Counted from the stretch's first letter, positions 17,861 through 39,706 are shown. The stretch: DNA of 64,000 bases from Scyliorhinus canicula (GCF_902713615.1 NC_052158.1:42433159-42497158); one strand, 5' to 3'. Notes: a model not told the origin generated them from the sequence alone. Program-made: numbers and translations.

Positions 17861-17911
17861 GAAACAGGAAGTTATTTCAGTTTTGGTTTGACTCAAAACT
17901 GTTCCAAAGAA
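17861..17911. promoter_or_regulatory. Cluster of immune transcription-factor motifs (IRF-ETS composite, ISRE-like, AP-1, STAT6-type GAS)
   Basis: GAAACAGGAAGT (17861-17872), TTTCAGTTTT (17875-17884), TGACTCA (17889-17895), TTCCAAAGAA (17902-17911, TTC-N4-GAA), all within 51 bp of non-repeat-looking DNA. Motif matches only. Confidence 0.35.
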
Positions 17912-18073
17912 TATTTCCAAATAAGGGTAAGTTGTGTGTGCCTGAGTTTGGAAAGATTCCAGGGTAAGTGTGTGAGAGCAGACAGTAACACACAAAACCC
18001 ACAGCTTCTGTTTGGGCAGCTGATCATCCTGAGTGTCCACAAGCTCAATAATAATGTAAACAGCTCGACTGTT

Positions 18074-18118
18074 AGCCAATAGGAACTTGTGGTCACCAGT
18101 TTGTCATCTGTTGCTGAG
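18074..18118 (-). promoter_or_regulatory. MHC class II-type X-Y module A
   Basis: Minus strand: CTCAGCAACAGATG (18118-18105), 21-nt spacer starting ACAAA, CCTATTGGCT (18083-18074). Confidence 0.6.
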
Positions 18119-18699
18119 AGACATTCTCTTCTGGTAGTCAAATTTCTAACATTGGTGCTAGGTAGCTCAGTCACTTTGCTTCTCCTGTGAGTTGATGATC
18201 CGGCTCCCTGAGGTTAGCTGTAGTGAAACACTTCAGTGGAACAGGCCTCACACACAGTTATAGCTCCATGGACATTATTCCCAGAGACAGGGCTGTCCCA
18301 TCACAGGTCAACATTCGGAACATCTTCACAAGGGGAAACAGACTGGAAAGGATACAATCCCCAATCTTAACCCCTGCCCAGGGGATATGGGGATAGACTG
18401 TTTATCATCCTGAGTTTAACTTCCTGTCGGGCAATAATCTGAGGGAAATCTTCATCTCACTGCATCCACATTGGTTTCATCAAGAAAAGACAATTAATGC
18501 AGAAAATAAGAGCCTGCACTGTTTGATCCAGTGAATGTGATTGGACACCAATGTAGTGAAGGACACTGCACTATTACAGCATGGAAGGTGGCCATCACGT
18601 CAGCACCAGCTCTCTGAATGAGTAACTCACCCGAGTGCCATTCTCCTGCCTTCTCCCTGTAACAGGAGAGACGGTGACGAAGTGGTATTGTCACTGGAC

Positions 18700-21600
18700 T
18701 AGTAATTCGCAGACCAGGTTAATTCTCTGGGCACCTGGGATTTGAAATTTGAATTCAATAAAAAATCTGGAATTAATAGGCCAAATAAAGACCGTGAAAC
18801 CATTGTCAATCATTGTAAAAACCCATCTGGTCCATTAATGTCCTTTAGGAAAGGTAATCTGTCAACCTTACCTAGTCTGGTCTACATACGATTCCAGACC
18901 CATGGCAAGGTGGTTGATTCTCAAATGGCCAGCAAGCCATTCAGTTCTCTGAAACCATTATGTGGTCCAACAAGTATAAAACCGGACAGACCAACAGCGA
19001 CCTAGGTACTGGAAGCAACAATGGCAAACTCAGTCCTGTCAACCCTGCAAAGTCCTTCTGAGCAACATCTGGGGAGTGTGCCAAAATTGGGAGAGCTGTC
19101 CCACAGTCTAGCCAAGCCTGACATAGTCCTCATGGAATCATATTTGAAGACAATGTCCAGACACCACAATCACCATTCCTGGGTATGTCCAGTCCCATCA
19201 GCAGGACTGGCCCAGCAGGGGTGGCAGCACAGTGGGATACAGTCGAGAGGGATCTGCTCTGAGAATCCTCAACATCAACTCGGACTCCATTAAGTCTCCT
19301 GGCACCAGGTCAAACATGGGCAATGAAACATCCTGCTGATTATTGTGACAATATGGATATTTTATGGTAAATGAAGGCTTAACAATTTGATGTGAATTCT
19401 TCCAACCGCTAGATGGAGATCAAGAGCATCTATGTGAATCACGTGATACCTTGATTCTGGGAGTAGGTGATTAGGCGGGATAGGGAGTAGTCGTGTTTTC
19501 AGAAGCTCAGCAGATAGAATAATTATCTTAGTGCATTTTGTAATATTTGTATCTTAGTAAGTTGATTTGAATCTAGTTATTAGTAGTGTTATTAAAATAA
19601 GCTTTGTTTGAAACATAGCTTGATGTTCTTTGTAAGACACTACACTTCAAAGCCATCCTCATCCACAAAGCAAAGAACATCTCAATTATCACATACCACT
19701 CCACTCCCCCTACCTGATCTGATAAATCAGTACTCCCCCATGTTGAACACTACTTGGAGAAATCACTCAGGGTGGCAAGGGTGCAGAATGTACTCTGGTG
19801 GGAGACGTCAATGTCCATCGCCAAAAGTGGCTCAATAGTACCACAGACCGATCTGGCCAGATCCTAAAGGACATAGCTGCTAGACTAGGCAGATGGTGAG
19901 GTAGTCATGCTTCACCTCATCCTCACCAACCCATCTGCCAGAGATGTATCTGTCCATGACAGTATCAATAGGAGTGACCATGGCACAGTCCCACAGAAGA
20001 TAAAATCCTTTTTTCACATTGAGGATGCCTTCATTGTGTTGCGTGGTACTACCACAGTGCTAAATGGAATAGATTTTGAACAGATCTAGCAACTCAAGAC
20101 TGGGCATCCATAAGGCATAGTGGGCCATCAGCAGCAGCAGAATTGTACTCGACCACAATCTGTAACCTCATGGCCCGACATATCCCCCACTCTACCATTA
20201 CCACCAAGCCAGGGGTCAACCCTGGTTCAATGAAGAGTACAGCAGAACATGCCAGGAACAGCATTAGGATTACCGAAAAATGAGGTGTCAACCTGGTGAA
20301 GCTACAACACAGGATTACATGTGTGTCAAACGCAGAAGCAGCAAGTGATAGACAGAGTGTAGCAATTCCACAAAGGATCAGACCTGAGCTCTGAAGTCTT
20401 GCCACATCCAGCTGTGAATGGTGGTGGACAATTAAACAACTCACTGGAGCAGGACGCCCCACAGATATCCCCATCCTCAATGATGGAGGAGCCCAGCATA
20501 TGTGTGCAAAAGACAAGACATAGAAACAGGAATTTGGAGCAGAAAAAGGTAATTCAGCCCTTTGAGCCTGCTCTGCCATTCAATCAGATCATGGCTGATC
20601 TCTTCCTGGCCTCAAATCCACCTCCGCACCTGTTGCCCATTTTTTAAATACAAATATATCTATCTCCTTCTTGCAGCCATTTAATGACAGACTCCACTGC
20701 ACTATGGGGCAGCGAGTTCCACAAATTCACCACCCTCTGCAACAAATAGTTCCTCCTCATCTCAGTTCTAAATCTACCACCTCTCAACCTATATCTGTGA
20801 CCTCTCATTCTAGATTGCCCCTCAAGGGAGAACATTTGGTCTTTGTTTACTTTATCAATCTTTTTTAGTATTTTCTGCACCTTTGATTTGATTTGATTTA
20901 TTATTGTCACATGTATTAGTATACAGTGAAAAGTATTGTTTCTTGCATGCTGTACAAACAATGCATACCGTACATAGGGAAGGAAGGAGGGACTGCAGAA
21001 TATAATGTTACAGTTATACCAAGGTGTAGAGAAAGGATCAACTTAATATGAGGTAGGTCCATCCAAAACACACCTCAATCAAATCCCATCTCATCCTTCT
21101 AAACTCCAGCGAATATAAACCCAAACTGTTTAATCTCTCCTCATACATCAGCTCTTTCATCCCCAGAATCAATCTGGTTAACCTCCTCTGAACTGCCTCC
21201 AATATCACCACATTCTTCTGCTGAGTGGATGATCACAGATGCCAGATCTAATACATGTGACAATAATAAATCAAATCAAATCACAGATGCCAGTCGTCAG
21301 CCAATTTGATTCACTCCATGTGATATCAAGAAATAGCTGATGACACTGGATACTATAAGGTTAATGGTCATGACAATATTCTGGCAGTAGTACTGAAGAC
21401 TTGTGCTCCAGACAAGCTGTTCCAGTACAGCTATCCTGCAATGTGTAATATCGTCCAGGTATGTCCTGGACACAAGAAACAGGACAAATCCAACGTGGCA
21501 ATTACTGCCCCATTAGTCAACTTTCAATCATGAATAGAGAGATGGAAGGAGTCATCAATAGCCCTATCAAGAAGCACTTACTCAGCAATAACCTGCTCAT

Positions 21601-22730
21601 AGATGCTCAGTTTGGATTCTGCCAGGGTCATTCAGCTCCTGACTTCATTACAGCCCTGGTTCAAGCATGGACAAAAGAGCTGAACTTCAGAGGAGAGATG
21701 AGAGTGACTGCCTTTGACATCAAGGCAGCAATGGGTGGCATGGTGGCATAGTGGTTAGCACTGCTGCCTCACAGCGTTCGGGACCCGGGTTCAATTCCTG
21801 CTTTGCGTGACTGTCTGTGCGGAGTTTGCACGCTCTCCCCGTGTCTGCGTGGGTTTCCTCTGGGTGCTTCTGTTTCCTCCCACAGTCCAAAGATGTGCAG
21901 GTTAGATGGATTGGCTATGCTAAATTGGCCCTAAATATCCAAAGGTTGAGTGGAGCTATGAGGATAGAGTGGAGGATGGGCCTGCATTGGGTAGTCTTTC
22001 AGAGCTTTGGTGCAAACTTAATGGGCTGAATGGCCTCCTTCTGCACTGAAGGGAGACTATGATTCTATGATTTGATCTAGTATGGCTTTGAGGAGCCCGA
22101 GCAAAACTAGAGTCAATGGGAATCGGGGAAAACCTTCTGCTGGTGGAGTCATACCTGGCACAAAGGAAGATGGTTGTGATGGTCAGAGGTCAATCATGTC
22201 AGCTCCAGGACATCACTGCAGGATTCCTCAGGGTAGTGTCCGAGGACCATCTTCAGCTGCTCCATCAATGACCTGCCTTCCATCATAAGGGCAGAAGTGG
22301 GAATGTTTGCGGATGACTGCACAATGTTCAGCACCATTCGCAACTCCTCAGATAATGAAGCAGCATATCCAAATGCAGCAAGACCTGGACATTATCCAGG
22401 CTTGGGTTGACAAGTGGCAAGTTACATTCGCACCATATAAGTGCCAGGCATCTCCAATAAGAGAGAATCTAATCATCAACCTTTGACATTCAATCACTGA
22501 ATCACCCACAATCAATATCCTGGGTTACAATTGATCAGAAACTGAACTGGAGTATCATATAAATACTGTGGCTACAAGAGCAGGTCAGAAGCCCAGAATC
22601 CTATGGCGAGTAACTCACCTCCTGGCCCCCCCAAAGCCTGTGCACCATCTACAAGGCACAAGTCAGGAGTGTCATGGAATGCTCTCCATTTGCCTGGGTG
22701 AGTCCATTCAATTGTTACCATGAGATCATT
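18700..22730 (+). mobile_element. Degenerate CR1/L2-type LINE remnants (EN and RT), interrupted by a minus-strand CR1 tail (about 20520-21230) and a SINE
   Basis: KPDIVLMESYL-type EN remnant (19021-), NYCPISQLSIMNREMEGVIN..AQFGFCQGHSAPD..TAFDIKAA (21461-), FADD-like remnant near 22310. Confidence 0.7.
21733..22070 (+). mobile_element. HE1/V-SINE-like SINE
   Basis: GGGTGGCATGGTGGCATAGTGGTTAGC head, GGTTCAATTCC B box, V core, CTATGATT tail. Confidence 0.88.
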
Positions 22731-22774
22731 TTCTTGCCTTGAGAATTCAACTCTTTAGTCATGATTCTTATCAT

Positions 22775-23108
22775 AGATCATAGAATTTATAGTGCAGAAG
22801 GAGGCCATTTGGCCCATCGACTGGCCCTTGGAAAGAGTACCCTACTCAAGCCCACACCTCAACCCTATCTTCCTAACCCAGTAACTCCACCTAATCTTTT
22901 GGATACTAGGGGGCAATTTACCATGGCCAATCCACCTAACCTGCACGTCTTTGGACTGTGGGAGCAAATTGGAGCACGTGGAGGAAACCCAAGCAGACAT
23001 GGGGAGAATGTGCAGACTCCACACAGACAGTGACCCAAGCTGGGAATCGAACCCGTGTCCCTGGCGCTGAGAAGCAACAGTGCAAACATTGTTAGCCACC
23101 GTGCCACT
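22775..23108 (-). mobile_element. HE1/V-SINE-like SINE
   Basis: Same family on the minus strand. Confidence 0.85.
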
Positions 23109-23149
23109 CATATCTCTGCAGGTGGGAGCACTGCCTCAGGATTTGCATG

Positions 23150-24800
23150 ATGCCAAGATTGTGACCATGTACAAGAATAAGGGTGACTGCAATAGTTGCA
23201 GTAACTAGTGAGGCATCTCGCTGATTGGCATCGTGGAAAAGCATTTGTTTTTGTTGCTCTTGTCAGACTGCAGATCCTGACTGAATGTATCTACCCAGAA
23301 TTCCTGTGTGATTTCATGACTGGAAGATCTACAGGTGATGTGATCTTGTCCGTCCGGTAGCTACAAGAGAAATGCCATGAACAAATTAGACCACTATGTA
23401 TTGTCTTCATCAATCTGACCCAGACATTTGACAACATGAGCAGAGGAGGTCAGTTCAAGTTATTGGAGAAAAATTATCTCCTCTTTTCATGACTACTTGA
23501 TGTGCAAGGTTAGCTATCCCAGTGGGGTCAAACAGGGTTGTGTTTTAGCACCAACACTTATTAACTGAAGAGTTATCTTTGCTGTTGTCATATACCTTCA
23601 GTTCATTTACTAAAGGTGGCCGCTTAAACACAAGAATGAATGGAAAGAAATCCAGCCTTGCCAGTCTGAGACCGAAGATAAAGATACACCAAGGGCGGGA
23701 ATCGGCGGGGTGGGCAACTCCGGCGTGAAGAAGTGGCGTGAACCACGCCGGTGTCAGGCCGCCCTGAAGGGCGGCCACTCGACCCATTGCGGAATCCTCC
23801 GCACCTTCAGGGGCTCGGCTGGCGCCAGAGAGGTTTGCTCCGCGCCGGCCGCGCAAAAGGGGCTTGGCGCCACGCCAACCGGCGCCGAAGGGCCTTCGCC
23901 GACCGGCGTGAGTTGGCGCATGTGTGGGAGCACCAGCGTGTGCTGGCGTCATCTCAGCGCATACGCGGGGGGGGGGGTTCATCTCCGCGCCGGCCATCAC
24001 GGAGGTCCACAGCAGCCGACGCAGAAGAATAGAGTGCCCCCACGGCTTAGGCCCGCCCGCAGATCGGTGGGCCCCAATCGCGGGCCAGGCCACCGAGGGG
24101 GCACCTCCCGGGGCCAGATCCCCCCCCTACCGAGGACTCCAGAGGCCGCCCACGCAGCCAGGTCCTGCTGGTAAGTACCTGTTGTAATTTACGCCGGCAG
24201 GACCGGCCTAAAATGGGCGGCCACTCGGCCCATTGCGGGCGGAGAATCGCTGGGGGGGAGCCACTACTAGAGGCCGCCGACCGGTGCGATTCCCGCCCCG
24301 GCCAAATCTCTGGCGCCGGAGAATTCGGCAGCAGGTTTCACGGGGGGGGGGTCAGAGAATCCCGCCCCAAGTCCTCATTGGAGAGTTTTTCCACACTGAT
24401 GATGCTGCACTAACATTCCATACTGAGGAACACCTGCAGCAGCAAATGGATTCTGTCACACCTGTAAAGAGTTTGGTTTGACCATCAGAATCTGGTCCAG
24501 GATGTTGCCATTCTGTCATCTATTAGCATTGACGCTGGAGAATGTTCATAGCTTCACACATCAAGGCTTCGCAATCACCAACAATCTGTCACTTGATGCT
24601 GAAATCAACAAATACATCAGAAAAGCTGTAGCTGTTGTGTCCAAGCTGAGAAAGAGTGTGGAATAACAGCAACCTGACTGAGAACACCAAGCTGTGAATC
24701 TACCAATCTGTGCTCTCAGTGCACTCCTCTAGAATGGTGAGATCTGGAAAACACATGCTGGACAGCAGAAAAGGCTGAACAGTTTCCACTTTCACTGTCT
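23150..24800 (+). mobile_element. RTE-type LINE RT remnant, split by a MITE
   Basis: Degenerate LYIAFIDLTKAFD-like segment (about 23390-23440) and FHTDDAAL (about 24385-24410). Confidence 0.6.
23693..24367. mobile_element. MITE, GGGCGGGA TIR, 3-bp TSD CAA
   Basis: CAA|GGGCGGGAAT ... GAATCCCGCCC|CAA; internally homologous to 61009-61654. Confidence 0.88.
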
Positions 24801-25269
24801 TATGGATGGATTTATAACCTTGAAACTTTATTTCCTTTAACCGCCCAACCAATTTTCTTTTGGAATTATTTATTGTCTTTGCTTTCATCATCCTCGTCAG
24901 CAACGAGTTCTAGGTCAGTACCACTAATTGCATTAAAAAATGTTCCTTACTCACATTCCTCTTCCACAGCTTACTCAAAACCGTAAATCTGTATCTCCTG
25001 GACCTTGTACTGTCAACTAATGGTGTCATAAACACTTCAGTCACGGAAAATCATTCATCTTCAAGGACTAAGAACATTCTGTAAGAATTTTTTTTTAAAA
25101 AGACACTGTCCCAAGAATGGTTAATTCAGGGAGCCTGGTGGCCATTGTTCTTGGGACTGACAGAATTTCACAGGAAAAGGTAATTAAGCAGTTTTAAAGA
25201 TGCTGGAAATCTGTTGACTCTCGTGGACTGTTTTCAAAACATGGCAGTTCCCGGCTTTGAAAAAACCAA

Positions 25270-25770
25270 GGCCGGAATTCACCGGTCATTGCGATTCAAT
25301 TTTCTCACTGGCAGCATACTACCGCCAGTGGGTTTCCCGGCAGCATTGGGTGGCTACAATGGGAAATCAGCAAGAAGATAGAATCGCTCCAGCAGGCAAT
25401 GGCACATGGCCGAAAAACACGGCTGGCGGACCGGTGAATCCAGCCCCATATCTGGAAAACTGTGTTCAAAAGCCGGTCAGCTTTGGGGAGAAAACAAGAA
25501 GGATCAGCGGCACCAAGGACCCGGATTCGGTTCCCGACTTGGGTCACTATCTGTGTGGAGTCTGCACTTCTCTCTGTGTCTGTGTGGGTTTCCTCCGGGT
25601 GCTCTGGTTTCCTCCCAAAAGTCCCAAAAGACGTGCTGTTAGGTGAATTGGATATCTGAATTCTCCCTCAGTGTACCCGAACAGACGCCGGAATGTGGCG
25701 ACTGGGGGATTTTCACAGTAACTTCATTGCAGTGTTAATGCCAGCCTACTTGTGGAACTAATAAATAACT
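25270..25770 (+). mobile_element. Short MITE (25270-25446) followed by a second SINE type with a different 3' tail (about 25506-25770)
   Basis: GGCCGGAATTCACCGG ... CCGGTGAATCCAGCCC. The SINE has a V core and a tail GTGGCGACTGGGGGATTTTCACAGTAACTTCATTGCAGTGTTAATG..AATAAATAA. Confidence 0.7.
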
Positions 25771-26022
25771 GTTTGGGTGAAGAAGACAACAGTTCATGAA
25801 GCTCCAGACACAGTCCATGGAAGAAAGTGAAAGGGAGTTGCTCCAAAGTCGCACTACATTCGGAAATGGACTGACTGCAAGTTTTCCTCAAAAAGTAGGC
25901 AAGGGTCATTGACCAGTGCTGAGAACGTAACCGTATAACCTGGGCACCATTTCAAGGATACCATCATTTACCAAGTTCCTTTGAACCATTTACTTTTAAT
26001 CATTTGGCAGAATCCCTCTATT

Positions 26023-26689
26023 CGGGATTCTCCGAGCCCGCGCCAGTTCGGGGAATCGCCGTTCCCGCCAGAAATCCATGCCACGCCGATCTGACTCCGG
26101 TGACTGGAGAATTGGCGCCATTTGCGCCTGCGCGGTCATCGTGACGCCGGTCAGGGGCCACTGAAAGAGGCCCCCCGCGGCGATTCTCCACGGGCAACCA
26201 GCTGAACTCCTGCCGAGTTCCGCCGAGTCCCGCCGGCGTGGTTCCAACCTGGTACCACCCAGCGGGAGCTCGGACCCGTGGCTGTGGTGGACGTCCTGGT
26301 GGGGTGGCGAGGGGATCTGACTCCGGGGTGCTTCCACGGGATCCAGGCCCGGGAACGGGGGCTTCCAATCGGTGGGCTCCTGCGGTCTGGAGAGGGCCTA
26401 CCTCCTTCTGTGCGGGCCCGCTGTAGCTCTCTGCCATGTTGCTTGGCGCCGGCGCGGAGACGGCAACCACGCGCATGCGCCAGTGTGGAGACGGCCGTTG
26501 CGCTCATGCGCAAACCTGCGTCAGCCGTGCAGGGCCGCCTTTCAGCACCACAGCAGGCAGCACTCCGGCGCCGTGCTGGCCCCCTGAAGACCGCTAGATT
26601 GCCGGAGGAGGCCCGTTGACGCCGGCGTCCACCACTCCGGTGTTTATGCCGGCGTCAACACTAGGCCGGGATTTCGGAGAATCCCAGCC
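26023..26689. mobile_element. GC-rich MITE of the same TIR family
   Basis: CGGGATTCTCCG ... CGGAGAATCCCAGCC; similar internally to 3784-4595. Confidence 0.75.
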
Positions 26690-28048
26690 ATGGTATTTAG
26701 AAAGAATAATTATTATACTTCTTTATTTCATACTATATGTTACTAAGCTTTATTTCTCTACTTGACCACACTAGTATTATAATAAACTAATAATTTGTTT
26801 ATTGAAAAACCTGGGCATTGAGTGATCATTCTGAGATTAACGGGTAAAGCACATATTTGTTCATGTAGCTAGCTGAAAAAATAATTTAAATAGATATCTG
26901 ACCCATGGCATAGTAAGATGACCCATGGCATAGCATTAACAATGGGAACAGATTTTCCATTTCCCTTATCTAAATCTCTCCTAATCTTGTACTGGTCTAT
27001 AAAATTCCCCTCAGTATATTTTACTCCAAGGAAAACCACACCAGCTTCTCCAATCCAGTTTGCAGCTAAAATCCCTCATCCCTGGCTCAGGACAAGGTCA
27101 AAACCCAGATGTCCTGGAGTGTGCTAGCACCATCAGTACACACTAATTGCTTAAACAATGATGTCTGCACTGGTTCATCCATGTTCATTGGATGGATAAT
27201 GGCTGTCTATCCAAAGATCTGTATAGTGCGGCCACCACTGGATCCTGGACATCTCTGCCTCTGCAATAAGGACACCTGAATGCAGGATAGGACAATTGCG
27301 GTCATTGACAACTGAGAATTGGGAGACAGTCGACAACATCTGTGACCTGTGGAAGCTGATTTTTTGGAAGGACGTAGGAAGAGGTCAGCAGGAACAGTTA
27401 GCTCATATCCTTGAGAAGAGGGCTCAGAAAAAACAGAGGCCAGCGAATCCTGCACTTTCTCAGTTCACTACCTCCCTATGCACAATGCAGCAGAGACTGC
27501 CGTACCAGACAGGGGCTCCTGAGCCACACCAGGCGATGTTTAACATAAAGTCGACCATCATAGCATAATCACTTCATCAGATAGAAGGCTATAACCAATT
27601 CATGATTGTCCAGAATGTGTAATAAGGTCAGCAGCTACATGATCCTGGGAGAACTCAAACTGAGTGTTAACAAACAGGTTATTGCTGAGTAGGTGCTGCT
27701 TGATAGCACTGTCACCGACCCGTTCAATAACTTTGTTGATGATCAAGAGTAGACTCACGGGTCGGTAATTGTCTGCATTGGATTTGTCTTGTTTCTTGTG
27801 TACAGGACATACTGGGGCAATTTCCCAAATTGCCAGTGTTGTAGCTGTATTTGAACAGCATGACTGGGGGCACAGGAAGTTCTGGGGCATAGGTCTTCAG
27901 TACTATTGCCAGAATATTGTCAGGGATCCTTTGCAGTATCCCGTGCCTTCAACCATTTCTTGACATCATGTGGAGTGAATCAGACTGGTTGGAGACTGGA
28001 ATCTCTGATGGTGGGGACCTCTGGAGGAGGTTGGGATGGACCATCAGT

Positions 28049-28345
28049 GGGCAGCACAGTGGCACAATGGTTAGCACTGCTGCCGCACAGCACCAGGCCC
28101 TCGGGTGACTGTGTGGAGTTTGCACTTTCTCCCCGTGTCTGCGTGCGTTTCCTCCGGGTGCTCCGGTTTCCTCCCACAGTTCAAAGATGTGAAGGTTAGG
28201 AGGATTAGTTATGATCAATTGCCCCAAAGTGTCCAAAGGTTAGGTGGGGTTACGGGATAGGGTGAGGGAGTGGGCCTAGATACAGTCCTCTTTCGGAGGG
28301 TCGGTGCAAATGGGCCGAATGGCCTCCTTTTGCACTGTCGGGATT
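28049..28345 (+). mobile_element. HE1/V-SINE-like SINE in a minus-strand LINE remnant (about 27570-28820)
   Basis: GGGCAGCACAGTGGCACAATGGTTAGC head, V core; B-box region deleted. Confidence 0.82.
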
Positions 28346-29344
28346 CACTCAGCACTTCTGAAGAGTGTGTGAATGCTTCAGCCTTGCATTTTGCACAGAT
28401 TTGCTGGCCTCCTCCATCTTTGGATGGGGGTATTTGTGGAGCCTCCTCCACCAGTGAATTGTTTAATTGTCCACCACCATTCATGGCTGGATGTGGCAGG
28501 ACTGCAGAGCTTAGATCTGATTTATTGGTTGTGGAATCGCTTAGCTCTGTCTATCACTTGCTGCTTATGTTTTAGCATGCAGGTAGTCCTTGTTGTAGCT
28601 TCACCAGGTCAACATCTCATATTAAGGTTAGCCTGGTGTTGCTCCTGGCATGCTCTCTTGCATTCTTCATTGAACCAGGGTTGATCCTCTGGCTTGGTGG
28701 TAATGGCAGTGGGGGATATGCCGGGCCATGAGGTTACAGATTGTGGTTGAATACAATTATGCTGCTGCTGATGGCCCACAGTGCCTCATGGATGCCCAGA
28801 CTTGAGCTGGTAAATCTGTTTGAAATCTATTTCATTCGACAAATACAGCATGATTTTTGATTTTTAAAAATTAATTTACGGGATATGGCCTGGCTGGCTA
28901 GACCAATATTTATCATCCATCTGTATTTTCCCTTGAGAAGGTGGTGGGAGCTATCTTGATGAATTGCTGCATTCCCTGTGGTGTAGATACACCCACAGTG
29001 CTGTTCGGAAAGTAGTTCCTGGATTTTACCCAGTGACAGTGAAGACACAGCCATATAATAAAATGACAGGGTTGGTGTTACCATGTATCTGCTGCATTTG
29101 CCCTTCTAGCTGGAGCCTTAGTGAGTTTCTACAGTGCATGTTGTAGATAGTTCCCTGCTGGTATTGTGTAGTGGTGGTGGAGGGAATAATGAAAGGTATC
29201 CTCAACATGAAGGTACAGTAGTCCCCCGTTATAACGCGCCCCGCAATACCGCGGTTCGCGATATACGGCGGGGGGGGGGGGGGTTTATGGACCCCAACTT
29301 ACTTGACTCATTTTAAACTCTTTTTGAAACAGCACCTTTTTGAG

Positions 29345-29659
29345 CCGCGATGATTAGACCGATTAGCAGCGATGATTACCCGCGATGATTAGACCGATTA
29401 GCAGCGATGATTACCCGCGATGATTAGACCGATTAGCAGCGATGATTACCCGCGATGATTAGACCGATTAGCAGCGATGATTACCCGCGATGATTAGACC
29501 GATTAGCAGCGATGATTACCCGCGATGATTAGACCGATTAGCAGCGATGATTACCCGCGATGATTAGACCGATTAGCAGCGATGATTACCCGCGATGATT
29601 AGACCGATTAGCAGCGATGATTACCCGCGATGATTAGACCGATTAGCAGCGATGATTAC
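29345..29659 (+). repeat. Perfect tandem array, 9 x 35 bp (CCGCGATGATTAGACCGATTAGCAGCGATGATTAC), inside the Tigger 5' region
   Basis: 315 bp = 9 identical units by inspection; degenerate partial units follow at about 29672-29707. Confidence 0.95.
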
Positions 29660-29778
29660 TGTACTGTAGAACGATTAGCCGCGATGAGTAGCCGCGACCG
29701 ATTAGCCCAGTTACACAGCCATAAAAGGGATACCTTTTCCAGTGCAGGTATCTTCGAGTTCAGTTGCTGTCGTTCAAA

Positions 29779-31446
29779 ATGTTTAAGCGCAAGTCTTACT
29801 CAGTGAGTCAAAAGATACATTTGATAGACCGGCTTCGAAACGGGGAAACGAAGGCAAAATTATCCAGAGAGACTGGTGTACCAGAGTCAACCCTCCATGG
29901 GTGGGTGAAAGATGAGCCCAATTTAAGAGCATATGTTGGGACAGTTTCTCAGAGTGAAGGGCTTAGCAGGAAAAAGGCAAGGAACGCTAGTGACAGTAAC
30001 TTAGAGAAGGCTGTGTTCACCTGGTTTGTCCAGGAACAGTCTGGTGGCACCCCCCTATCTGGACCTATCATCAGGACTCAGGCTGAGAAGTTCCATCACC
30101 AGCTCCACCTAGAGGACAGCAATTTCGTAGCCAGCAAGGGTTGGCTCCATCGGTTCCAGAAAAGACATGGGATAGGTGCAGTTGCCATCAGTGGTGAACA
30201 GAGATCCGCCGACTCAGGAGCCGCAGCAGCCTTTCCCGACATCCTCAAGAACTACATGGTGCAAGAGGAGCTGACCCCAGAGCAACTCTACAATGCAGAT
30301 GAGTCAGGGCTTTACTGGAAGATGCTGCCTGACAAGACCCTAGCTGTCAAGGATGATGCCCACAAGACTCTGGGGTACAAGCAAGCCAAGAACAGGCTCA
30401 CCATCCTGTTTGCCAGCAATGCCACGGGAACACACAAGCTGAAGCCATTGATTGTGGGCAAATTCAAGTCTCCTAGATGCTTTCACCACATCAACATAGA
30501 GAACCTACCCATTACCTACCGGAACTCTGGCAAAGCCTGGATGACAGCTTCCTTATTTGAGGAGTGGTTCTTCAAGTTCTTCGTACCCAGTGTCAGGGAC
30601 CACCTTAGAGCCCGCAACTTACCGCAGAAGGCCACACTCCTACTGGACAACTGCTCAGCCCACCCTCAGGGAGATGTTCTCAAGACCAGGGATGGGCAGA
30701 TCCAAGTGCTCTATCTCCCAAAGAACACCACCAGCAAGATCCAGCCATGTGATGCTGGCATCATTCAGACCTTCAAGTCTGTGTACAAAAAGGAACTGAC
30801 CCTGGAAATGATAGACTCTCCTCTCACTGTCCCAGATTACCTGAAAGCCATCACCATCAAGGATGCCTGTTATCTGGCAGGGAAGGCCTGGGGAGCTGTG
30901 ACAGAGAAGACCATCGCCAACTGCTGGAACAAGGCCCTAGGAGCAGCACTCCCACGACCCCAACATTACCCGGATGAAGAGGATTTCGTAGGCTTTACTG
31001 AAGCAGAGATCAGGGCAGCTGAGGAGAGGCTAGAGGACCAACTGGATGAGAACCTAACACTCCAGGATTGGGTGGACAGGTGGGCAGCAGCAGAGGATGA
31101 CATGGCACCCGCAGAAACATTCACAGAGGAGGAGATCATCGACCAGGTCACGCAAGAGGAGGCAGAAGAAGAAGAAGAACCCCAGCCCACAGTGGCAAAG
31201 AGCCACTCGGATGCCATCACGCACCTGAAGTGGCTCATAGCATACACAGAGCAGCAAGACTTCGACCCGATATACATCCTGCACCTGAAGAACCTCCAGA
31301 GACAAGCACAAGTCAAGATGAGGAAGGGGATACATGTGCCAGAGGAAACTCACAGACTTTTTAAAATGATTTTTAAAAATATGCGTGTAAGTACAATTTT
31401 AAGTATATTATTGTATGTATACTGTATATTATTGTATATATTTTAA
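29779..31446 (+). CDS. Tigger/pogo transposase (CENP-B-type HTH domains + DDE_1 domain, DD34D), open except a probable +1 frameshift in the last about 10 codons
   Basis: HTH (SRETGVPESTLHGW), HTH_Tnp_Tc5 (WF..PLSGPII..A, ASKGWLHRFQKRHGI), YNADESG, LLLDNCSAH, IQPCDAGII, acidic tail. The +1 frame ends QRKLTDFLK* (TGA 31367-31369), a typical Tigger C-terminus. Confidence 0.9.
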   Translation: MFKRKSYSVSQKIHLIDRLRNGETKAKLSRETGVPESTLHGWVKDEPNLRAYVGTVSQSEGLSRKKARNASDSNLEKAVFTWFVQEQSGGTPLSGPIIRTQAEKFHHQLHLEDSNFVASKGWLHRFQKRHGIGAVAISGEQRSADSGAAAAFPDILKNYMVQEELTPEQLYNADESGLYWKMLPDKTLAVKDDAHKTLGYKQAKNRLTILFASNATGTHKLKPLIVGKFKSPRCFHHINIENLPITYRNSGKAWMTASLFEEWFFKFFVPSVRDHLRARNLPQKATLLLDNCSAHPQGDVLKTRDGQIQVLYLPKNTTSKIQPCDAGIIQTFKSVYKKELTLEMIDSPLTVPDYLKAITIKDACYLAGKAWGAVTEKTIANCWNKALGAALPRPQHYPDEEDFVGFTEAEIRAAEERLEDQLDENLTLQDWVDRWAAAEDDMAPAETFTEEEIIDQVTQEEAEEEEEPQPTVAKSHSDAITHLKWLIAYTEQQDFDPIYILHLKNLQRQAQVKMRKGIHVPEETHRLFKMIFKNMRVSTILSILLYVYCILLYIF

Positions 31447-31633
31447 TAAATTTAAAACTTGATTTAAGACTTGAACGAACTTTGCTGTTTCTTATTTAAA
31501 ACGCCCTTCCATTCAGCAATGTTCAGCACAGTCAGCGATGTTTCCTCTCGTTCATTCATTTGGATATCTGCCATCTTGGATATCCGCGGCTCGGTTACAA
31601 CGCGGTTGGCTGTCTTGGACCCGAACACCCGCG

Positions 31634-31905
31634 GCTGGGTCACTGTCTGTGTGGAGTCTGCACGTCCTCCCCGTGTGTGCGTGGGTTTCCTCCGGGTGCT
31701 CCGGTTTCCTCCCACAGTCCAAAGATGTGTGGGTTAGGTGGATTGGCCATGCTAAATTGCCCGTAGTGTCCTAATAAAGTAAGGTTAAGGGGGGGTTATT
31801 GGGTTACGGGGATAGGGTGGTTACGTGGGTTTGAGTAGGGTGATCATGGCTCGGCACAACATCGAGGGCCGAAGGGCCTGTTCTGTGCTGTACGGTTCTA
31901 TGTTC
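31634..31905 (+). mobile_element. 5'-truncated HE1/V-SINE-like SINE inserted inside the right TIR of the Tigger element
   Basis: The left end reads CAGTAGTCCCCCGTTATAACGCG; the right end reads CGCG[SINE]TATAACGGGGGACTACTG. Confidence 0.85.
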
Positions 31906-33165
31906 TATAACGGGGGACTACTGTAGTAATCTTTTTTCTCCACAAAGGCTGTGTGGTGTTGGACCCTACCATATTGTCATGGACAGATGCATCTGTGGCA
32001 GGTTGATTGGTGAGGATGAGCAGTGATGCCAGTGGATTGAAGGATTTAACAGAAGGGAAAAGCAAACAGGTGCCATTTACAAGACATTCATGCTCGAGTT
32101 GGGGAAGATCTCAGAATTGATAATCGGGGACAAAAAACCAACTACTCACAGACTACAGTCTATGTTCTAGTAATGAAATTCTCTGCATCGAAATGCAACC
32201 TCCAAAAATACATTCTGCCTGGCAACAGATGACATAACTCAGATGTTTAATTTCATTGGCTAAGCATGTTTTTCTAACATATTTAATGACACTTGACAGA
32301 TTAAGCAATTGCAGTAAATCTGTTGATTTGCTGTTTGTAGTGGGGGATTTTCCACTCATGCCCTTCCCCCTCCCTGCAAACTGGAACTGAAGCGGAACTG
32401 TCTTTGCAGCTCTGTGTTTCTCAATCTAGACATACCAGCGTCTAAAGAATAAACTCCCGCCTACCACCTTCCACCTGGCAAAACCTGTTCTCATTCTGAA
32501 CAAATTTCCCCTGAAACTCCACTCTTTTCCTCCAAATGAAAGGAATACCTGCTGTGGGTATCTGCATGGCTCCGAGCAATGCCTGCCTTTTTGTGGGATA
32601 TGTGGAACATTCCTTATCCCTACTCAGGCCCCCATTCTCCTTTTTTCCCCAGTGCAATGCAGCTTCAATGGAGTTACTGTGAAAGGCCCCTAGTCGCCAC
32701 ATTCAGACGCCTGTTTGGGGAGGCTGATACAGGAATTGAACCGTGCTACTGGCCTGCCTTGGTCTGCTTTAAAAGCCAGCGATTTAGCCCAGTGTGCTAA
32801 ACCAGCCCCAAAACTTACATCTTTCCAATTTTCACCCATCACCTTCACCTATTCCATCTCTGACCCTTTGAACCCTTAACTCCTCCATTGTTTTCAGGGA
32901 AGGCTATGAAGGAAAATTCACTAGATTTACACACAAACATAGGAATTAGGAACAGTCGAGTACTCAACCCGACATTCAACCCGAATCCTTGATCTGATTG
33001 TAACGTCAACTCCAAATTCCTGCCTTCCCCCGATAACCTTTTACCCCATTGTTAATCAAGAATCTATCTACTTCTATCTTAAAATATTCAAAGATTCAAA
33101 GAAGAAAGTTCCAAAGACTCATGACCCTTTTAGAGGAAAATGTTCCCCTCATCTCTCTCTTAAAT

Positions 33166-33735
33166 GGACGAATTCTCGGGAGTGATTCAGTGGAGTTGAG
33201 TTAAAATAGAAAAACACCGCACTTTGCAAAATCCCAAAGGCACTTTGGTGTTTTTCTTTGGCCTAGCTGAGGAACTCCACATCGAGGCCACTCTTTTAGT
33301 AATTTCTACTACTCGTGGACTGGGATGCCATTTTAAAAGGAGCCCCAATCCATCAACACCCCCACCCCCCACAACTTCACCCAATTTACCTCTTCCGGGG
33401 TCCTTGAGTCCCTCCTCATCCCACCTCTTGTGGGAAAGACCCCCACCAGGCCTGACCCTTGGCATGGGTAACCTTTCACCTTGGCACTGTCAGCATAGCG
33501 AGGGTTGCACTGCCAGGGTGCCTGGGTGGCAGTGTCAAGGTGCTAAGCCAGCAGTGCCAAAATGCCCAGGTGATGGGGGAGTACCAGGGTGTCACTCTGC
33601 CTAGTGCCTGACCACCCGGGGGCCTCAACCTTCCCCCCCCCCAGTTGAGGCTCTGCTGGGGAGGCAGATGAATCCCGGGCCCCAGGTGAATCTGGCAAAC
33701 ACACATTTCAATGAGACTAATGGATCATTTAAATA
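33166..33735. mobile_element. Truncated MITE related to 45416-46222 and about 59830-60390
   Basis: Shared blocks TGGCACTGCCAGG/GGCAGTGCCA and TGGGATGCCATTTT(T)AAA; only one terminus is recognisable. Confidence 0.55.
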
Positions 33736-34199
33736 GGCCACCTACATCTTGTCCAGCAAGCTGAGCCTATCCAACCTTTCCTCAACAGGCAACTCACCCA
33801 TTCCAGGTATTAATCTAGTAAACATTCTCTGAACTGCTTCCAATTCATTTCCTCAAATAAGGTGACCAATACTGTATACATTACTCCAAATGTGATCTCA
33901 TTAGTGCTCTGTACAACTGAAGCATAACCTCCCTACTTTAGTATTCAATTCCCCTTGAAATAAATGATAACATTCTATTAGATTTACTAATTATTTTCTG
34001 TACCTGTATACTAGCATTTAGTGATTTATACAGGAGAAGACCCAAATCCCACTCCATCTCAAGAGCTCTGCAATCTCTTACCATTTAGATAATAAGCTTC
34101 TCTTTTTTTCCTCCTGCCAAAATGGACAATTTCACATTTTCTCACATTAAACTCCATTGCTCATTCATTTAACCTATCTATGTCCATTTGTAGCCATCA

Positions 34200-35200
34200 T
34201 ATGTTGCCAATGGCAGATGCAATATAATTTGGATAAGTGTGAGGTTATTCACTTTGGTAACAAAAACAGGAAGTCAGATTACTCCCTGAATGGTTGTAAA
34301 TTGGGAGAGGAGAGTGTACAGTGGGACCTGGGTGTCCTTGTGCTGAAGGTAAGCATGCAGGTGCAGCAGGCGGTAAAGACGGCTAATGGTATGTTGGCCT
34401 TCATTGCGAGAGGTTTCGAGTACAGAAGCTGGGATGTGTTGTTGCAATTATACAGGGCCTTGGTGAGGTCACACCTCGAATATTGTGCGCCGTTTTGGTC
34501 TCCTTTTCTTTTCTTTTTTTTAAATAAATTTAGATTAGCCAATTATTTTTTCCAATTAAGCGTGGCCAATCCACCTACTCTGCACATTTTTGGGTTGTGG
34601 GGGCGAAACCCACGCAGACACGGGGAGAACGTGCAAACTCCACACGGACAGTGACCCAGAGCCGGGATCGAACCTGGGACCTCAGCGCCGTGAGGCAGTT
34701 GTGCTAACCACTAGGCCACCGTGCTGCCCTTTGGTCTCCTTTTCTGACCAACCTGTTTCCAATGGATCATCCGCCATTTCACTCACCTCCAACATAGCGA
34801 CATCATGAACTGCATCTTCCTCACCACCCCACTTTCAGCATTTTAATGAAACCTTTCCCTCCACAACATGGCATGGTGACACAGTGGTTAGCACTGCTGC
34901 CTTACAACACCAGGGACTCGGGTTCAATTCCCAGCTTGGGTCACTGTCTGTGTGGAGTTGGCACATTCTCCCCGTGTCTGCATGGGTTTCCTCCAGGTGC
35001 TTTGGTCTCTTCCCACAGTCCAAAGACGTGCAGGTTAAATAGATTGGCCATGCTAAATTGCCCCTTGGTGTCCAAATAGGTGTAGGTTAGGGGTTACGGG
35101 GTTACGGGGACAGGGTGAGAAAGTGGGCCTGGGTGAGGTGCTCTTGAGAGTTGGTGCAGACTTGATTGACTGAATTGTCTCCTTCTGCACTGCAGGGGTT
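34200..35200. mobile_element. CR1 fragment (34200-34509, +), young SINE with 16-bp TSD (34510-34729, -), and an older SINE (about 34865-35195, +)
   Basis: CEVIHFG...YCAPFWSP (CR1). TSD TTTGGTCTCCTTTTCT at 34494-34509 and 34730-34745. The 34510 SINE is nearly identical to 4016-4242. Confidence 0.85.
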
Positions 35201-36131
35201 CTATCGTTCCAACACCCTGATCCACTCCTCAGTACCCTCCCTCCCATTGCACCTTTCCACGCAAGCACAGCAGATAGAACACCCGCCCTTTTACCTCCTC
35301 CCTCCCGTAGGCCCACTCGTTCCAGGTGACACAGTGATTTACCTGTATTTTGCTAAATTTAGTGTACTGTAATTGCTACTCACAATGCAGTCCGCCCTTC
35401 ACGCACACTGAGTGATGGCTTTTCAGAACATTTCTGTTCAGTCCAGTGAGGGGAACACAACCTTTGATGGCCCTTCTCTAGTTTATTCTAATCCACCGGA
35501 CGTGGTTTGATTCATTAATACAACTGAGGCTTGAGTTGAGTCAGCCTATCAAGTCTGTTCTGTCATTGAATATGATCGTGCCCAATCTTCTGCCTCAACT
35601 CCAATTTCCCACACTGTCCCCATATTCTTTGATTCATTGAGAAATTAAAAATGTCTCTGTCAAAGGCTTGAATATACTTGATGATGAAGCATCCACAATT
35701 CTTTAAGGTAAAAAAATCACCAGAGCTTCACAGACCTCTGGAAGTGAAGGAGTTCCTCCTCGTCTTCGGTGATCAACTTATTTTCCTGAGACTGTGTCCT
35801 AGATTCCCCAGAGAGGGGTAACAAAATCTCTGTTGACCCATGTTTAATCATGTGATTCCCAGTTTGGTGGAAAATAAACTGAATGGACTGTGGTCTTTAT
35901 CATGCTTCCAATTACAGGAAGCCTCTGCTTCCTGTCTCCAGACACTGGATTTATGAAGAGGGGACTATCAAGACCAGTTTTGTAGCAGTCATTCTTAATC
36001 CATCTCAGTTTAGAAGGATACTGATAGAGGGCACAACCTCTATCTTATGCTAATCCAGTGTTGGTGCTGAATGTGTTTCCATTGACTAATGTAACTGAAG
36101 CTCTGGGTTTAGCCATCGTGCGTAACAGACT

Positions 36132-36176
36132 CTGAGCAACAGATGACAAATTGATATGGGAAAGATCCTATTGGTT
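36132..36176 (+). promoter_or_regulatory. MHC class II-type X-Y module B
   Basis: CTGAGCAACAGATG (36132-36145), 21-nt spacer starting ACAAA, CCTATTGGTT (36167-36176); same architecture as module A. Confidence 0.6.
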
Positions 36177-37590
36177 AGTTGGGACGATACTGACCCACAT
36201 ACTAGTTACAGGTGGGATGGTGTCATTTCCAAATGGAAACTGTTGTTTTGTGGTTAGTTCCCTTTCTGACAGTGAATCTGTTACTCTATAACAGACAAGA
36301 ACAAACACATGCTAATTTAGACATGAATGCAATGTTGTTTGGACCAGTCTCATGTGCTGAACCAAAGTTCCTATTTTCTCTCATTTTTACTTCCCCATAC
36401 CAGCAAAAGAGGATTCGAAATCAGAAGTGTTGGCGTATGTAAAGGGGAGGGGGTGTTATTTTCAATAAACCTGCTCTGCAATTAAAGTCGATTTTCAGGG
36501 TTGTGTTGAGTTGTTTGATGCTGTAGATACTCACTGATGTAAAACTGCCCTAGCCCGTGCTCTTTACAGACCCTACTACCTGCTGGGTGTTATCCTCGTT
36601 AATCTCCTCTTACCCTGCTACCTGAGCCATCTCGGTCTCTGCGATTGGATTAGTTCTTATATCCCTGCAGAATATCTGTTCGCTTGTTAATAAGACTTTG
36701 TCATCCAGGACCGTATTGAGGATGATTGAATTGAAATCATGGCATTGGGGAAAGATTGGCTGATGCGTCAACCAGTCAACCATTTCTCTCTTAATGATAC
36801 CTTCAGTTATCTGCTCTGCCCAGATCATTGCAGCAATGCCGTGGTCTTTATCACCAATACACCTTTCCTCTATTTCTCTGATGACATCTCCTCACCTTTT
36901 TCCATCTCTTCAGTTGTTGCCCTCTAAACCCCACCTCAGGTTTCTCTCTGAGGTATCCTCACCTCTCTCACCTTCTGCACTGTGACACCTTATTGTCAGT
37001 GGTTCAAACCACTCTGCAAATTCACTCTCTGTCCTGATTTTTCTTCCTCCTGTCCTCCATTAACCTCTTCCTGCAGAAAAACTCAAACTCTCCAGTCATA
37101 TTCACAACCAACATTTTGAAGTTGTCTTTCCCATGGCACCTTTATTCTCACAGATGATGCAGTCTCTGAACATCACATTCTTAGCAATCTCATCCAAACC
37201 ATTGCTTTTAATATCTCCCAGAAAAAAAGCTCCCCCCAAATCACTTACAACAGCACTTAAACTTCCAACTCTTTTTTTACCCTCTATTTATCTTAATATT
37301 TCTGCCTTTGTTATTCTAACCTTTGCTCTCTTCCCACCTGGGTATTGCTCTGATACCTGTTCATTGGAATATCAGACCGCACATTTGAGCATATCTGGTA
37401 CAGGACTGGGTTAACCATCATCAACAGATCTTGTTGAACCCCAACTCCTTCTGTGGGGCTTTACCTCTCAATGCATAATCCTACTGATCACTTTTGGATT
37501 GTCCTTGGGAACAAGGATAAGCACTGAATACTCTAATCTAAACTATTTCTTAAACCCCTCTCCCCACTGAAGATTTCCTTGTCACCAAGA

Positions 37591-39206: not shown

Positions 39207-39212
39207 TTTAAT
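39207..39212 (-). terminator. Candidate polyadenylation signal (ATTAAA) of the MHC class II beta gene
   Basis: ATTAAA on the minus strand about 470 nt after the stop codon, following an AU-rich stretch with ATTTA motifs (about 39250-39320). Not verifiable without transcripts. Confidence 0.3.
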
Positions 39213-39680
39213 CAAACTGGTTCCACAATGACAGACAAATTAAGATTAAAATGTTATTAAATCATAATCTCCATAAAATCATTTACAAATGCAGAATTTG
39301 ACATGTAAATAAAAGTAGATTTCAAAAAATTTACAACAAGGCGAAGGCTGAATACACAGACAAAGAAATGTTAGAACAGTAAGGAAGTACACCCAGCATT
39401 GATCCCTGTATCTCACCTCTGGGCGGAGTGTCAGTCACTCATGACTCAGGTTAACAGTGAGCTGCACACTGATCATATTTCTATGTATTTAACATGATAA
39501 ACAAGCTGGTGTAAAAATATCCCATAACTGCATAAAGTTAATCGCAAGCAATCAAAAGCCAAGGTCAAGCAGCCGTAGTCTCTCTGGATACTGAGTTGGG
39601 ATGAGTTAAAGGTGCATTTTAAAGCTGTTTCATCCTGTCTTTCATCCCGAAGTCTGATCACATCCATGAGACTGGATCGG

Positions 39681-39706
39681 TTAACTGACAGCTGGACCCA
39701 TCAGAC
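39681..39706 (-). CDS. mhc2b: MHC class II beta chain, terminal coding exon (..R-LMGPAVS*)
   Basis: ctttgtttcag|GT CTG ATG GGT CCA GCT GTC AGT TAA; phase 1 matches the upstream exon ending in C (C|GT = Arg). Confidence 0.85.

What the first reader, a model, noticed from the sequence alone, without database searches (positions are those of the whole stretch)
18074..36176. Two paralogous MHC-II X-Y modules, back-to-back 18 kb apart, with identical 21-nt spacing and no class II gene attached
Seen: module A (minus, 18118-18074) is CTCAGCAACAGATG-ACAAA..(21 nt)-CCTATTGGCT; module B (plus, 36132-36176) is CTGAGCAACAGATG-ACAAA..(21 nt)-CCTATTGGTT. The shared 11-mer AGCAACAGATG is expected about 0.03 times by chance in 128 kb of both strands. 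Both have TTT(GA/AG)C(T/C)A ending 16 nt upstream of X (the S-box position). Both have a GG-ATG 40-46 nt past Y with alignable sequence after it (ATGATCAGCTGCCCAAACAGAAGCTGTGGGTTTTGTG vs ATGGTGTCATTTCCAAATGGAAACTGTTGTTTTGTG). The spacers themselves have diverged while X, Y and spacing are kept. Established: RFX/NF-Y/CIITA act through X-Y modules, including distal ones in mammals. Inference: with the 2743 module these may form a set of CIITA-responsive distal enhancers or promoter relics around a cartilaginous-fish class II beta gene. I do not recall such a set described in sharks, but could not search. Module B points toward the 3' end of the beta gene and could fire antisense RNA.
Basis: partly seen in the sequence, partly recalled or inferred. 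Interest (0 to 1): 0.8.

Follow-up and report, generated by a model that had tools for sequence, protein, structure and literature searches.

The report
Orphan MHC class II promoter-type modules
Downstream of a catshark MHC class II beta gene lie four gene-less copies of the X-Y control module that switches class II genes on in mammals; they look like old promoter copies, possibly kept as distant enhancers, which is a known arrangement in humans.

Summary
The window is small-spotted catshark DNA. It holds exons 3-6 of a classical class II beta gene on the minus strand (48712 down to 39684).

**Observation.** Both modules are exactly as described.
- X1/X2 is 18/19 identical and Y is 9/10. The 16-nt spacer is only 7/16 identical but has the same length.
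- A further ~135-nt block, 57-191 nt past Y, is homologous (z 4.3-6.7).

**New here.**
- C and D form a second paralogue pair. Their S regions match 22/40 in register (p 0.0002), and each has an NF-kB site 85-90 nt past Y.

**Context.**
- No coding exon follows any module.
- B lies 2.3 kb past the end of the beta 3'UTR.
- RNA-type contigs rich in beta mRNA show only background, unspliced cover over B.
- The modules are not inside the window's SINE, LINE or DNA-transposon copies.

**Reading.** These are promoter-derived S-X-Y modules that have lost their genes. They are most likely kept as RFX/NF-Y/CIITA-type distal elements, like the human S'-Y' and XL elements. Dead relics are not excluded, and function is untested.

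This is a new member of a known kind. Unchecked scan notes report similar orphan modules elsewhere on this chromosome.

The parts
18074..18118 (-). Module A: X1/X2 box CTCAGCAACAGATGACAAA, 16-nt spacer, Y box CCTATTGGCT. The span from GCAAC to ATTGG is 39 nt.
17882..18015 (-). Block downstream of A that is homologous to the block downstream of B. It lies 57-191 nt past Y, in the expected TSS and first-exon zone. No frame is conserved. It contains a degenerate kB-like GGAATCTTTCCAAAC at about 17960.
   Evidence: 68% identity, 8 gap openings, z 4.3-6.7
36132..36176 (+). Module B: X1/X2 box CTGAGCAACAGATGACAAA, 16-nt spacer, Y box CCTATTGGTT. The span from GCAAC to ATTGG is 39 nt.
36229..36366 (+). 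Block downstream of B that is homologous to the block downstream of A.
   Evidence: RNA-type contigs cover it only at depth 0-4 and unspliced.
32219..32263 (+). Module D, new here: CTGGCAACAGATGACATAAC...TTTCATTGGCTAA. The span from GCAAC to ATTGG is 38 nt.
32344..32353 (+). NF-kB consensus site GGGATTTTCC, 85 nt past the Y box of D.
2752..2799 (+). The span from GCAAC to ATTGG is 28 nt, exactly 10 nt shorter than in D.
   Evidence: The S region matches D at 22/40 in register, p 0.0002.
2885..3173 (+). A 108/109-bp unit repeated 2.7 times. Each copy starts with the NF-kB site GGGACTTTCC (2886, 2995, 3104). The first site lies 90 nt past the Y box of C.
38481..48712 (-). The 3' part of the classical class II beta gene. 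Exon 3 (beta2) is 48712-48431. Exon 4 (connecting piece and TM) is 44048-43932. Exon 5 is 42106-42074. Exon 6 is 39704-39684, followed by the stop codon. The 3'UTR runs down to about 38481-38833.
   Evidence: 100% identity to the S. canicula beta chain P0001; tblastn; contig cover of the 3'UTR
6785..15286 (.). Transposon fill downstream of A. A LINE lies on the minus strand (RT ORF 6785-9706, ORF1-like 11272-12192). A hAT element lies on the plus strand (12456-15286).

Best explanation
**What they are.** The 37 kb downstream of a catshark classical class II beta gene holds four gene-less copies of the MHC S-X-X2-Y regulatory module.
- They fall into two paralogue pairs. A and B share a decayed segment in the expected start-site and first-exon zone. 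C and D share an S region and an NF-kB site 85-90 nt past Y.
- They arose by duplication of MHC-type promoters.
- No coding exon lies behind any of them today.

**How they most likely work.** The RFX site (X1), the TGAC half of X2, the inverted CCAAT (Y) and the helical X-Y spacing have outlasted the surrounding sequence. The most likely present role is therefore as binding platforms for the RFX/CREB/NF-Y enhanceosome, which recruits CIITA. They would act at a distance on the neighbouring class II gene or genes, as the distal S'-Y' and XL elements do in the human MHC-II region.

**Shown:** existence, enrichment over chance, paralogy, differential conservation, absence of exons, and absence of a spliced or abundant transcript at B.

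**Inferred:** factor binding, enhancer function, and the target gene.
For: **Enrichment.** Four matches to GCAACNGATG-N(8-30)-ATTGG against 0.04 expected.

**Differential conservation in A/B.**
- The boxes are 27/29 identical, the spacer 7/16, and the best-aligned downstream block 68%. The chance of 27/29 at that rate is 0.0016; Fisher p is 0.003.
- There is no indel in the 45-nt module, against 8 gap openings in the 143 aligned columns downstream.

**Spacing.**
- The X-Y span is 39, 39 and 38 nt in A, B and D.
- It is 28 nt in C, exactly one helical turn shorter than its paralogue D. That keeps X and Y on the same face of the helix.

**The C/D pair.** Both carry a consensus NF-kB site 85-90 nt past Y. 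Such sites occur about 25 times per 64 kb on both strands.

**No gene relics.** No class II exon relic lies near any module, although 68%-identical non-coding homology is still detectable. This argues for retention of the modules alone.

**Not a repeat, as far as tested.**
- The modules are not in the window's repeat families.
- No terminal inverted repeats flank them.
- No contigs pile up over B, unlike the SINE 1.4 kb away.

**Precedent.** Distal S-Y and XL elements that bind RFX and CIITA are established in the human MHC-II region and the Ii gene (PMC7866136, PMC1802633 Table 1).
Against: - No binding, chromatin or reporter data exist for this shark.
- Cross-species conservation could not be tested, because no DNA was returned for other shark assemblies.
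- The box-versus-flank contrast is partly circular, since the modules were found by their boxes.
- That contrast would also arise if A-D were copied from promoters that diverged while still in use and lost their genes only recently.
- The S box is weak and unlike the mammalian consensus.
- X2 is only a half site (TGAC).
- Genome-wide copy number is unknown.
Confidence: 0.5

Rival explanations
1. They are dead promoter relics. A-D would be what is left of class II (or other MHC) genes whose exons were deleted in this transposon-rich flank. The boxes look conserved only because the source promoters were under selection until recently, and shark DNA decays slowly. On this reading they have no present function.
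For: - A and B keep homology in the expected first-exon zone, but without any frame and with indels not divisible by three.
- No transcript is seen at B.
- The region is mostly LINE, hAT, Tigger and SINE copies.
- One module of each subtype sits in each half of the region (C with A, D with B). This recalls the IIA-then-IIB tandem gene order of white shark and sawfish.
Against: - Four promoter-only remnants exist with no trace of any coding exon. Yet 68%-identical non-coding homology is still detectable, and a beta profile finds the true exons at E 1e-60 to 0.02.
- The X-Y distance has no indels in A/B.
- The 10-nt loss in C preserves helical phase.
Confidence: 0.3
2. They are live promoters of unannotated transcripts. 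Each module, or some of them, would drive a non-coding RNA. B would give an RNA antisense to the beta 3' end. A might drive a gene whose further exons lie beyond the left edge of the window.
For: - The modules have promoter-like layout, and the A/B homologous block lies where a first exon would be (PMC2677874 for the 50-100 bp distance to the TSS).
- B has a good splice donor, GTG|GTTAGT, at 36253/36254.
- One deep contig set (X5) holds 17% of the sampled words of 17650-18450 around A. This was not resolved.
- Shark MHC genes have very long introns. This beta gene spans 40 kb.
Against: - Cover over B is 0-4 against 700-55000 for the beta 3'UTR, and it is colinear with the genome, with no joint at 36253 and no rise after B.
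- X1, which is rich in beta mRNA, holds none of the A-region words.
- No gene is called within 10 kb of the beta gene in the public annotation.
- No signal-peptide exon with a good donor follows A.
- No Rfam family matches anywhere in the window.
Confidence: 0.12
3. They are chance matches or parts of an old low-copy transposon or LTR that happens to carry X-, Y- and kB-like motifs.
For: - Upstream flanks of A and B are not significantly alike by local alignment.
- LTRs often carry CCAAT and NF-kB sites (my own knowledge).
- Genome-wide copy number could not be measured.
- Unchecked scan notes report other orphan SXY+kB modules about 10 Mb away.
Against: - Four matches against 0.04 expected.
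- Order, orientation and spacing follow the mammalian rule in all four.
- No TIRs, LTR-like direct repeats or other repeat structure surround them.
- No read or contig pile-up at 90% likeness over B.
- Neutral decay of an old repeat would not spare just the boxes.
Confidence: 0.06

Closest known systems
Proximal S-X-X2-Y (SXY) module of MHC class II promoters, with HLA-DRA as prototype
   Same: - The order and orientation X1, X2, Y are the same.
- The X1 core AGCAACAGATG and the Y core ATTGG match the HLA-DRA boxes as I recall them (my own knowledge, not checked here).
- The span from GCAAC to ATTGG is 38-39 nt. I recall 38 for HLA-DRA.
- The literature states that order, orientation and spacing are fixed (PMC1802633, PMC7866136).
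   Different: - No class II exon or transcript follows, whereas true modules lie 50-100 bp upstream of a TSS (PMC2677874).
- X2 is only the TGAC half site.
- The S element is weak and lies further from X than I recall for DRA.
- C has a spacer one helical turn shorter.
Distal S'-Y' enhancers and X-box-like (XL) elements of the human MHC-II region and the Ii gene (Krawczyk et al. 2004 and Gomez et al. 2005, as cited in PMC7866136; data in PMC1802633 Table 1; XL9 in PMC2292219)
   Same: They are SXY-type or X-type modules inside a class II region but away from any promoter. Several occur per locus, in either orientation.
   Different: - The human elements are shown to bind RFX and CIITA and to enhance transcription. 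Nothing of that kind is shown here.
- The shark set is a tight cluster in the 3' flank of a beta gene.
- The shark set is demonstrably made of two paralogue pairs.
Class II promoters with extra elements past Y, such as DQA with an NF-kB site and a T box (PMC6155461), and the invariant-chain promoter (my own knowledge)
   Same: C and D combine S-X-Y with a consensus NF-kB site 85-90 nt downstream of Y.
   Different: - No gene follows.
- In C the kB-bearing unit is triplicated.
- The layout of the catshark's own class II A, class II B and Ii promoters could not be read here.
Class II pseudogene fragments in mammalian MHC regions
   Same: They are left-overs of gene duplication in a rapidly rearranging region.
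   Different: From my own knowledge, mammalian class II pseudogenes and gene fragments usually retain recognisable exons. Here only the regulatory module and a decayed first-exon zone remain.

Membership tests
MHC S-X-X2-Y regulatory module | X1 box (RFX site) of the type AGCAAC.GATG | tested here: met
   All four modules carry GCAACNGATG. A and B carry AGCAACAGATG exactly.
MHC S-X-X2-Y regulatory module | X2 box (CRE-like) abutting X1 | tested here: inconclusive
   Only a TGAC half site is present: GATGACAAA in A and B, GATGACATA in D, and GATGATTCT in C. No statistical or binding test was possible.
MHC S-X-X2-Y regulatory module | Y box, an inverted CCAAT (ATTGG), on the same strand downstream of X | tested here: met
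   CCTATTGGCT, CCTATTGGTT, TTCATTGGCT and CTGATTGGTT.
MHC S-X-X2-Y regulatory module | Fixed X-Y spacing, giving stereospecific alignment | tested here: met
   The span from GCAAC to ATTGG is 39, 39 and 38 nt. It is 28 nt in C, which is 10 nt shorter than its paralogue D. The comparison with 38 nt in HLA-DRA rests on my memory.
MHC S-X-X2-Y regulatory module | S/W box at a fixed distance upstream of X | tested here: inconclusive
   In-register identity of the 40 nt before X is 22/40 for C-D (p 0.0002) and 16/40 for A-B and for A-D (p 0.03). C has an X-like S box, TTCAGCAACATA. None was compared with a curated S profile.
MHC S-X-X2-Y regulatory module | Lies 50-100 bp upstream of the TSS of an antigen-presentation gene (PMC2677874) | tested here: not met
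   No class II exon lies behind any module. No spliced or abundant RNA is seen at B. No gene is called within 10 kb of the beta gene.
MHC S-X-X2-Y regulatory module | Occupied by RFX5/RFXAP/RFXANK, CREB, NF-Y and CIITA | not testable with these tools
   This needs ChIP, CUT&Tag or EMSA.
Distal S'-Y' / XL enhancers of MHC-II loci | An SXY- or X-type module inside the class II region but not at a promoter | tested here: met
   The modules lie 3.5, 7.4, 21.6 and 36.9 kb from the beta stop codon in its 3' flank.
Distal S'-Y' / XL enhancers of MHC-II loci | RFX- and CIITA-dependent enhancer activity | not testable with these tools
   This needs reporter assays in wild-type, CIITA-deficient and RFX5-deficient cells, as in PMC1802633.
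Class II pseudogene or gene relic | Decayed coding exons next to the promoter | tested here: not met
   A beta-chain profile, tblastn, and Ig-C1 and alpha-TM motif scans find only the live beta exons. No class II alpha query was available, so alpha1 relics are excluded less firmly.
Dispersed repeat or transposon | Many copies alike over their whole length, with terminal repeats | tested here: inconclusive
   Within the window this is not met. No contig pile-up is seen at B. Genome-wide copy number could not be measured.

The most novel reading that the evidence does not exclude
The four modules form a selectively maintained 3' control cluster of enhanceosome platforms, two of them coupled to NF-kB sites. 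It would act as a locus-control or super-enhancer-like region for the shark class II genes. Distal SXY enhancers, so far known only from mammals, would then date back to the common ancestor of cartilaginous and bony vertebrates.
Probability: 0.3. Interest if true: 0.6.

Novelty: new member of a known kind. Interest (0 to 1): 0.42.

Why it matters
The SXY enhanceosome is the textbook example of a fixed-geometry regulatory module, and its distal copies organise long-range control of human MHC-II genes. In the paper library searched here I found no description of SXY modules, proximal or distal, in a shark class II region.

If the catshark modules are bound and active, two things would follow. 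The mammalian X-Y geometry would be about 450 million years old. The use of extra gene-less modules would also be ancestral rather than a mammalian elaboration.

The two paralogue pairs also offer a natural experiment on which positions the enhanceosome needs. The boxes and the helical phase are kept, while the spacer sequence is free.

If they are dead relics, they mainly document class II gene turnover in a transposon-rich flank.

Tried and rejected
**1. Fetching true class II promoters for comparison.**
- The look-up of encoding contigs gave no DNA for the catshark beta gene or for the S. torazame contig, because the files were too large.
- A search with the beta leader (P0001:1-40) for short genomic ORFs found nothing.
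- So the questions 'is 39 nt the shark norm?' and 'which gene's promoter was copied?' stay open.

**2. Class II alpha comparison.** I had no tool-given alpha protein, and I did not type one from memory. Alpha exons were sought by motifs only.

**3. Beta-leader test.** A profile of 23 elasmobranch beta leaders was run against the three frames downstream of each module.
- The best hit was a B frame, VLWLVPFLTVNLLLYNRQ, at E 0.076 in a 12-sequence set.
- The 'LW' does not fall on homologous bases in A.
- I rejected it as not robust.

**4. Pack-type transposon carrying a promoter and exon 1.** No terminal inverted repeats were found around any module.

**5. Stringent local alignment.** Alignment of the flanks at +2/-3 showed nothing. 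Only softer scoring recovers the A-B block. A-C, A-D, B-C and B-D are not significant by alignment. A and C share CTTTCCAAAC and ACACACAAC in the same order, which I count only as a hint.

**6. Rfam.** No family matches in the window.

**8. Citation for the HLA-DRA box sequences.** Two attempts to find one in the library failed. Those comparisons are marked as my own knowledge.


Full report
**Where we are.**
The beta2-type exon at 48712-48431 (minus) is 100% identical to a Scyliorhinus canicula class II beta chain of 272 residues (P0001).
- tblastn places exon 4 at 44048-43932, exon 5 at 42106-42074 and the last coding exon at 39704-39684.
- The leader and beta1 exons lie beyond the right edge of the window. 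The annotated gene spans 40.2 kb, and no other gene is called within 10 kb of it.
- Only one Ig-C1 exon exists in the window.
- The rest is largely transposons. There is a LINE at 6785-12192, a hAT at 12456-15286, a Tigger/pogo element at 29764-31446, a Ty3/Gypsy element at 54431-58754, and many SINE copies.

**The observation.**
Both modules are exactly as written.
- The exact 11-mer occurs only at these two places.
- The looser architecture GCAACNGATG-N(8-30)-ATTGG has four matches against 0.04 expected and 0.017 in my own simulations.
- The span from GCAAC to ATTGG is 39 nt in A and B, 38 in D and 28 in C.

**Paralogy.**
- Within the 45-nt modules A and B, X1/X2 is 18/19 identical and Y is 9/10. 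The 16-nt spacer is 7/16, with no indel.
- Downstream, a block 57-191 nt past Y (A 18015-17882, B 36229-36366) aligns at 68% with 8 gap openings. The score is z 4.3-6.7 above shuffles, p <= 0.006.
- Upstream flanks are not significant by local alignment. In register, the 40 nt before X match 16/40 (p 0.03).
- C and D form a second pair. Their S regions match 22/40 in register (p 0.0002).
- Both C and D have a consensus NF-kB site on the same strand: GGGACTTTCC 90 nt past Y in C, and GGGATTTTCC 85 nt past Y in D.
- In C the kB-bearing 108/109-bp unit is present in 2.7 copies.
- The C spacer is exactly 10 nt shorter than that of D. That keeps X and Y on the same face of the helix.

**Is a gene attached?**
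No gene is attached within the window.
- A profile of 23 elasmobranch beta chains finds the live exons at E 1e-60, 4e-17 and 0.02, and nothing else.
- Motif scans for Ig-C1 strands and for the alpha-type transmembrane pattern find nothing further.
No frame is conserved.
- The ATG lies 41-46 nt past Y. Class II transcription starts 50-100 bp past the S-Y module (PMC2677874). The ATG is therefore at or before the expected start site, and the conserved block sits in the expected first-exon zone.
- A weak resemblance of one B frame to the beta leader (E 0.076 among 12 sequences) is not matched at homologous bases in A. I do not rely on it.

**Transcription.**
I laid three RNA-type contig sets and one raw oligo-dT run on 35600-41500.
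- The beta 3'UTR is covered from 39736 down to about 38481-38833, at depths of 700 to 55000.
- Module B therefore lies about 2.3 kb beyond the end of the mRNA and 3.5 kb from the stop codon, pointing towards the gene.
- Over B the depth is 0-4.
- The one contig across it (35923-36342) is colinear with the genome, with no joint at the possible donor at 36253.
- Depth does not rise downstream of B. It rises gradually only towards the beta gene, as read-through or background would.
- The raw run has no reads there, but it has only about 10x on the beta 3'UTR.
- For A, the word index shows 0.17 in one deep set and 0.00 in the others, including one rich in beta mRNA.
- This is weak negative evidence. 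The data are contigs from unknown tissues.

**Repeat or not?**
- The modules lie outside every repeat family that the window shares with itself.
- They have no terminal inverted or long direct repeats.
- B shows no contig pile-up at 90% likeness, while the SINE at 37570-37963 reaches depths of 10^4-10^5.
- Genome-wide copy number could not be measured with the tools left.

**Interpretation.**
- The geometry follows the rule stated for mammalian S-Y modules: fixed order, orientation and spacing (PMC1802633, PMC7866136).
- The boxes and the phase have survived while the spacer and flanks drifted. No exon relic is left, although 68% non-coding homology is still visible.
- This fits modules retained for their own sake, like the distal S'-Y' and XL elements that bind RFX and CIITA in the human MHC-II region and Ii gene (PMC7866136, PMC1802633 Table 1, PMC2292219).
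- SXY followed by NF-kB is also known from DQA-type promoters (PMC6155461).
- The main rival is recent loss of the genes from once-live promoters. The conserved boxes would then reflect past rather than present selection.
- One detail fits either reading. One module of each subtype lies in each half of the region (C with A, D with B), which recalls the IIA-then-IIB tandem order of white shark and sawfish (PMC10751288 supplement).

**Novelty.**
- In the library searched I found no description of SXY modules in shark class II regions.
- Orphan or distal SXY modules are well known in mammals. This is a new member of a known kind, with untested function.
- Unchecked notes of this scan report further orphan SXY or X-box modules on the same chromosome.

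Noticed in passing
window 32383-32400: GGAACTGAAGCGGAACTG lies 30 nt past the NF-kB site of module D. It resembles an ETS/IRF composite element (GGAANNGAAA, 9 of 10, by my own recollection of the consensus). I made no chance estimate.
   Followed up: no
window 29345-29659: A perfect tandem array of a 35-nt unit, 9.0 copies with 100% matches. It lies just upstream of an intact-looking 560-residue Tigger/pogo transposase ORF at 29764-31446 (DDE_1, HTH_Tnp_Tc5 and CENP-B_N domains).
   Followed up: partly
window 40448-41012: A minisatellite with a 38-nt unit, 15 copies at 90% matches. It lies in the beta-gene intron between exon 5 (42074) and the last coding exon (39704).
   Followed up: partly
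window 54431-58754: A Ty3/Gypsy retroelement with an open 1099-residue pol ORF (protease, RT, RNase H, integrase) and a 370-residue gag-like ORF. It sits on the plus strand inside the long beta-gene intron upstream of the beta2 exon.
   Followed up: partly
window 6785-15286: A LINE with a 973-residue RT ORF and a 306-residue ORF1-like ORF lies on the minus strand. Next to it are hAT transposase ORFs on the plus strand, with a hAT dimerisation domain. Together they fill most of the space downstream of module A.
   Followed up: partly
window 38481-39736: The beta 3'UTR shows two levels of cover. It is very deep from 39736 to about 39146, and 20-50 times lower down to 38481-38833. This suggests alternative polyadenylation sites.
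   Followed up: no
window 17650-18450: One deep RNA-type contig set (X5) holds 17% of the sampled words around module A. That is about the size of the expected first-exon zone. I could not tell whether it is that zone or background.
   Followed up: no
window 35923-36342 compared with 37137-38323 and 39800-40075: A contig set labelled as another organism (X2) differs from the window at 4 of 420 bases across module B. It differs at 32 of 1138 bases in neighbouring non-coding stretches. This may mean local constraint or just haplotype structure.
   Followed up: no
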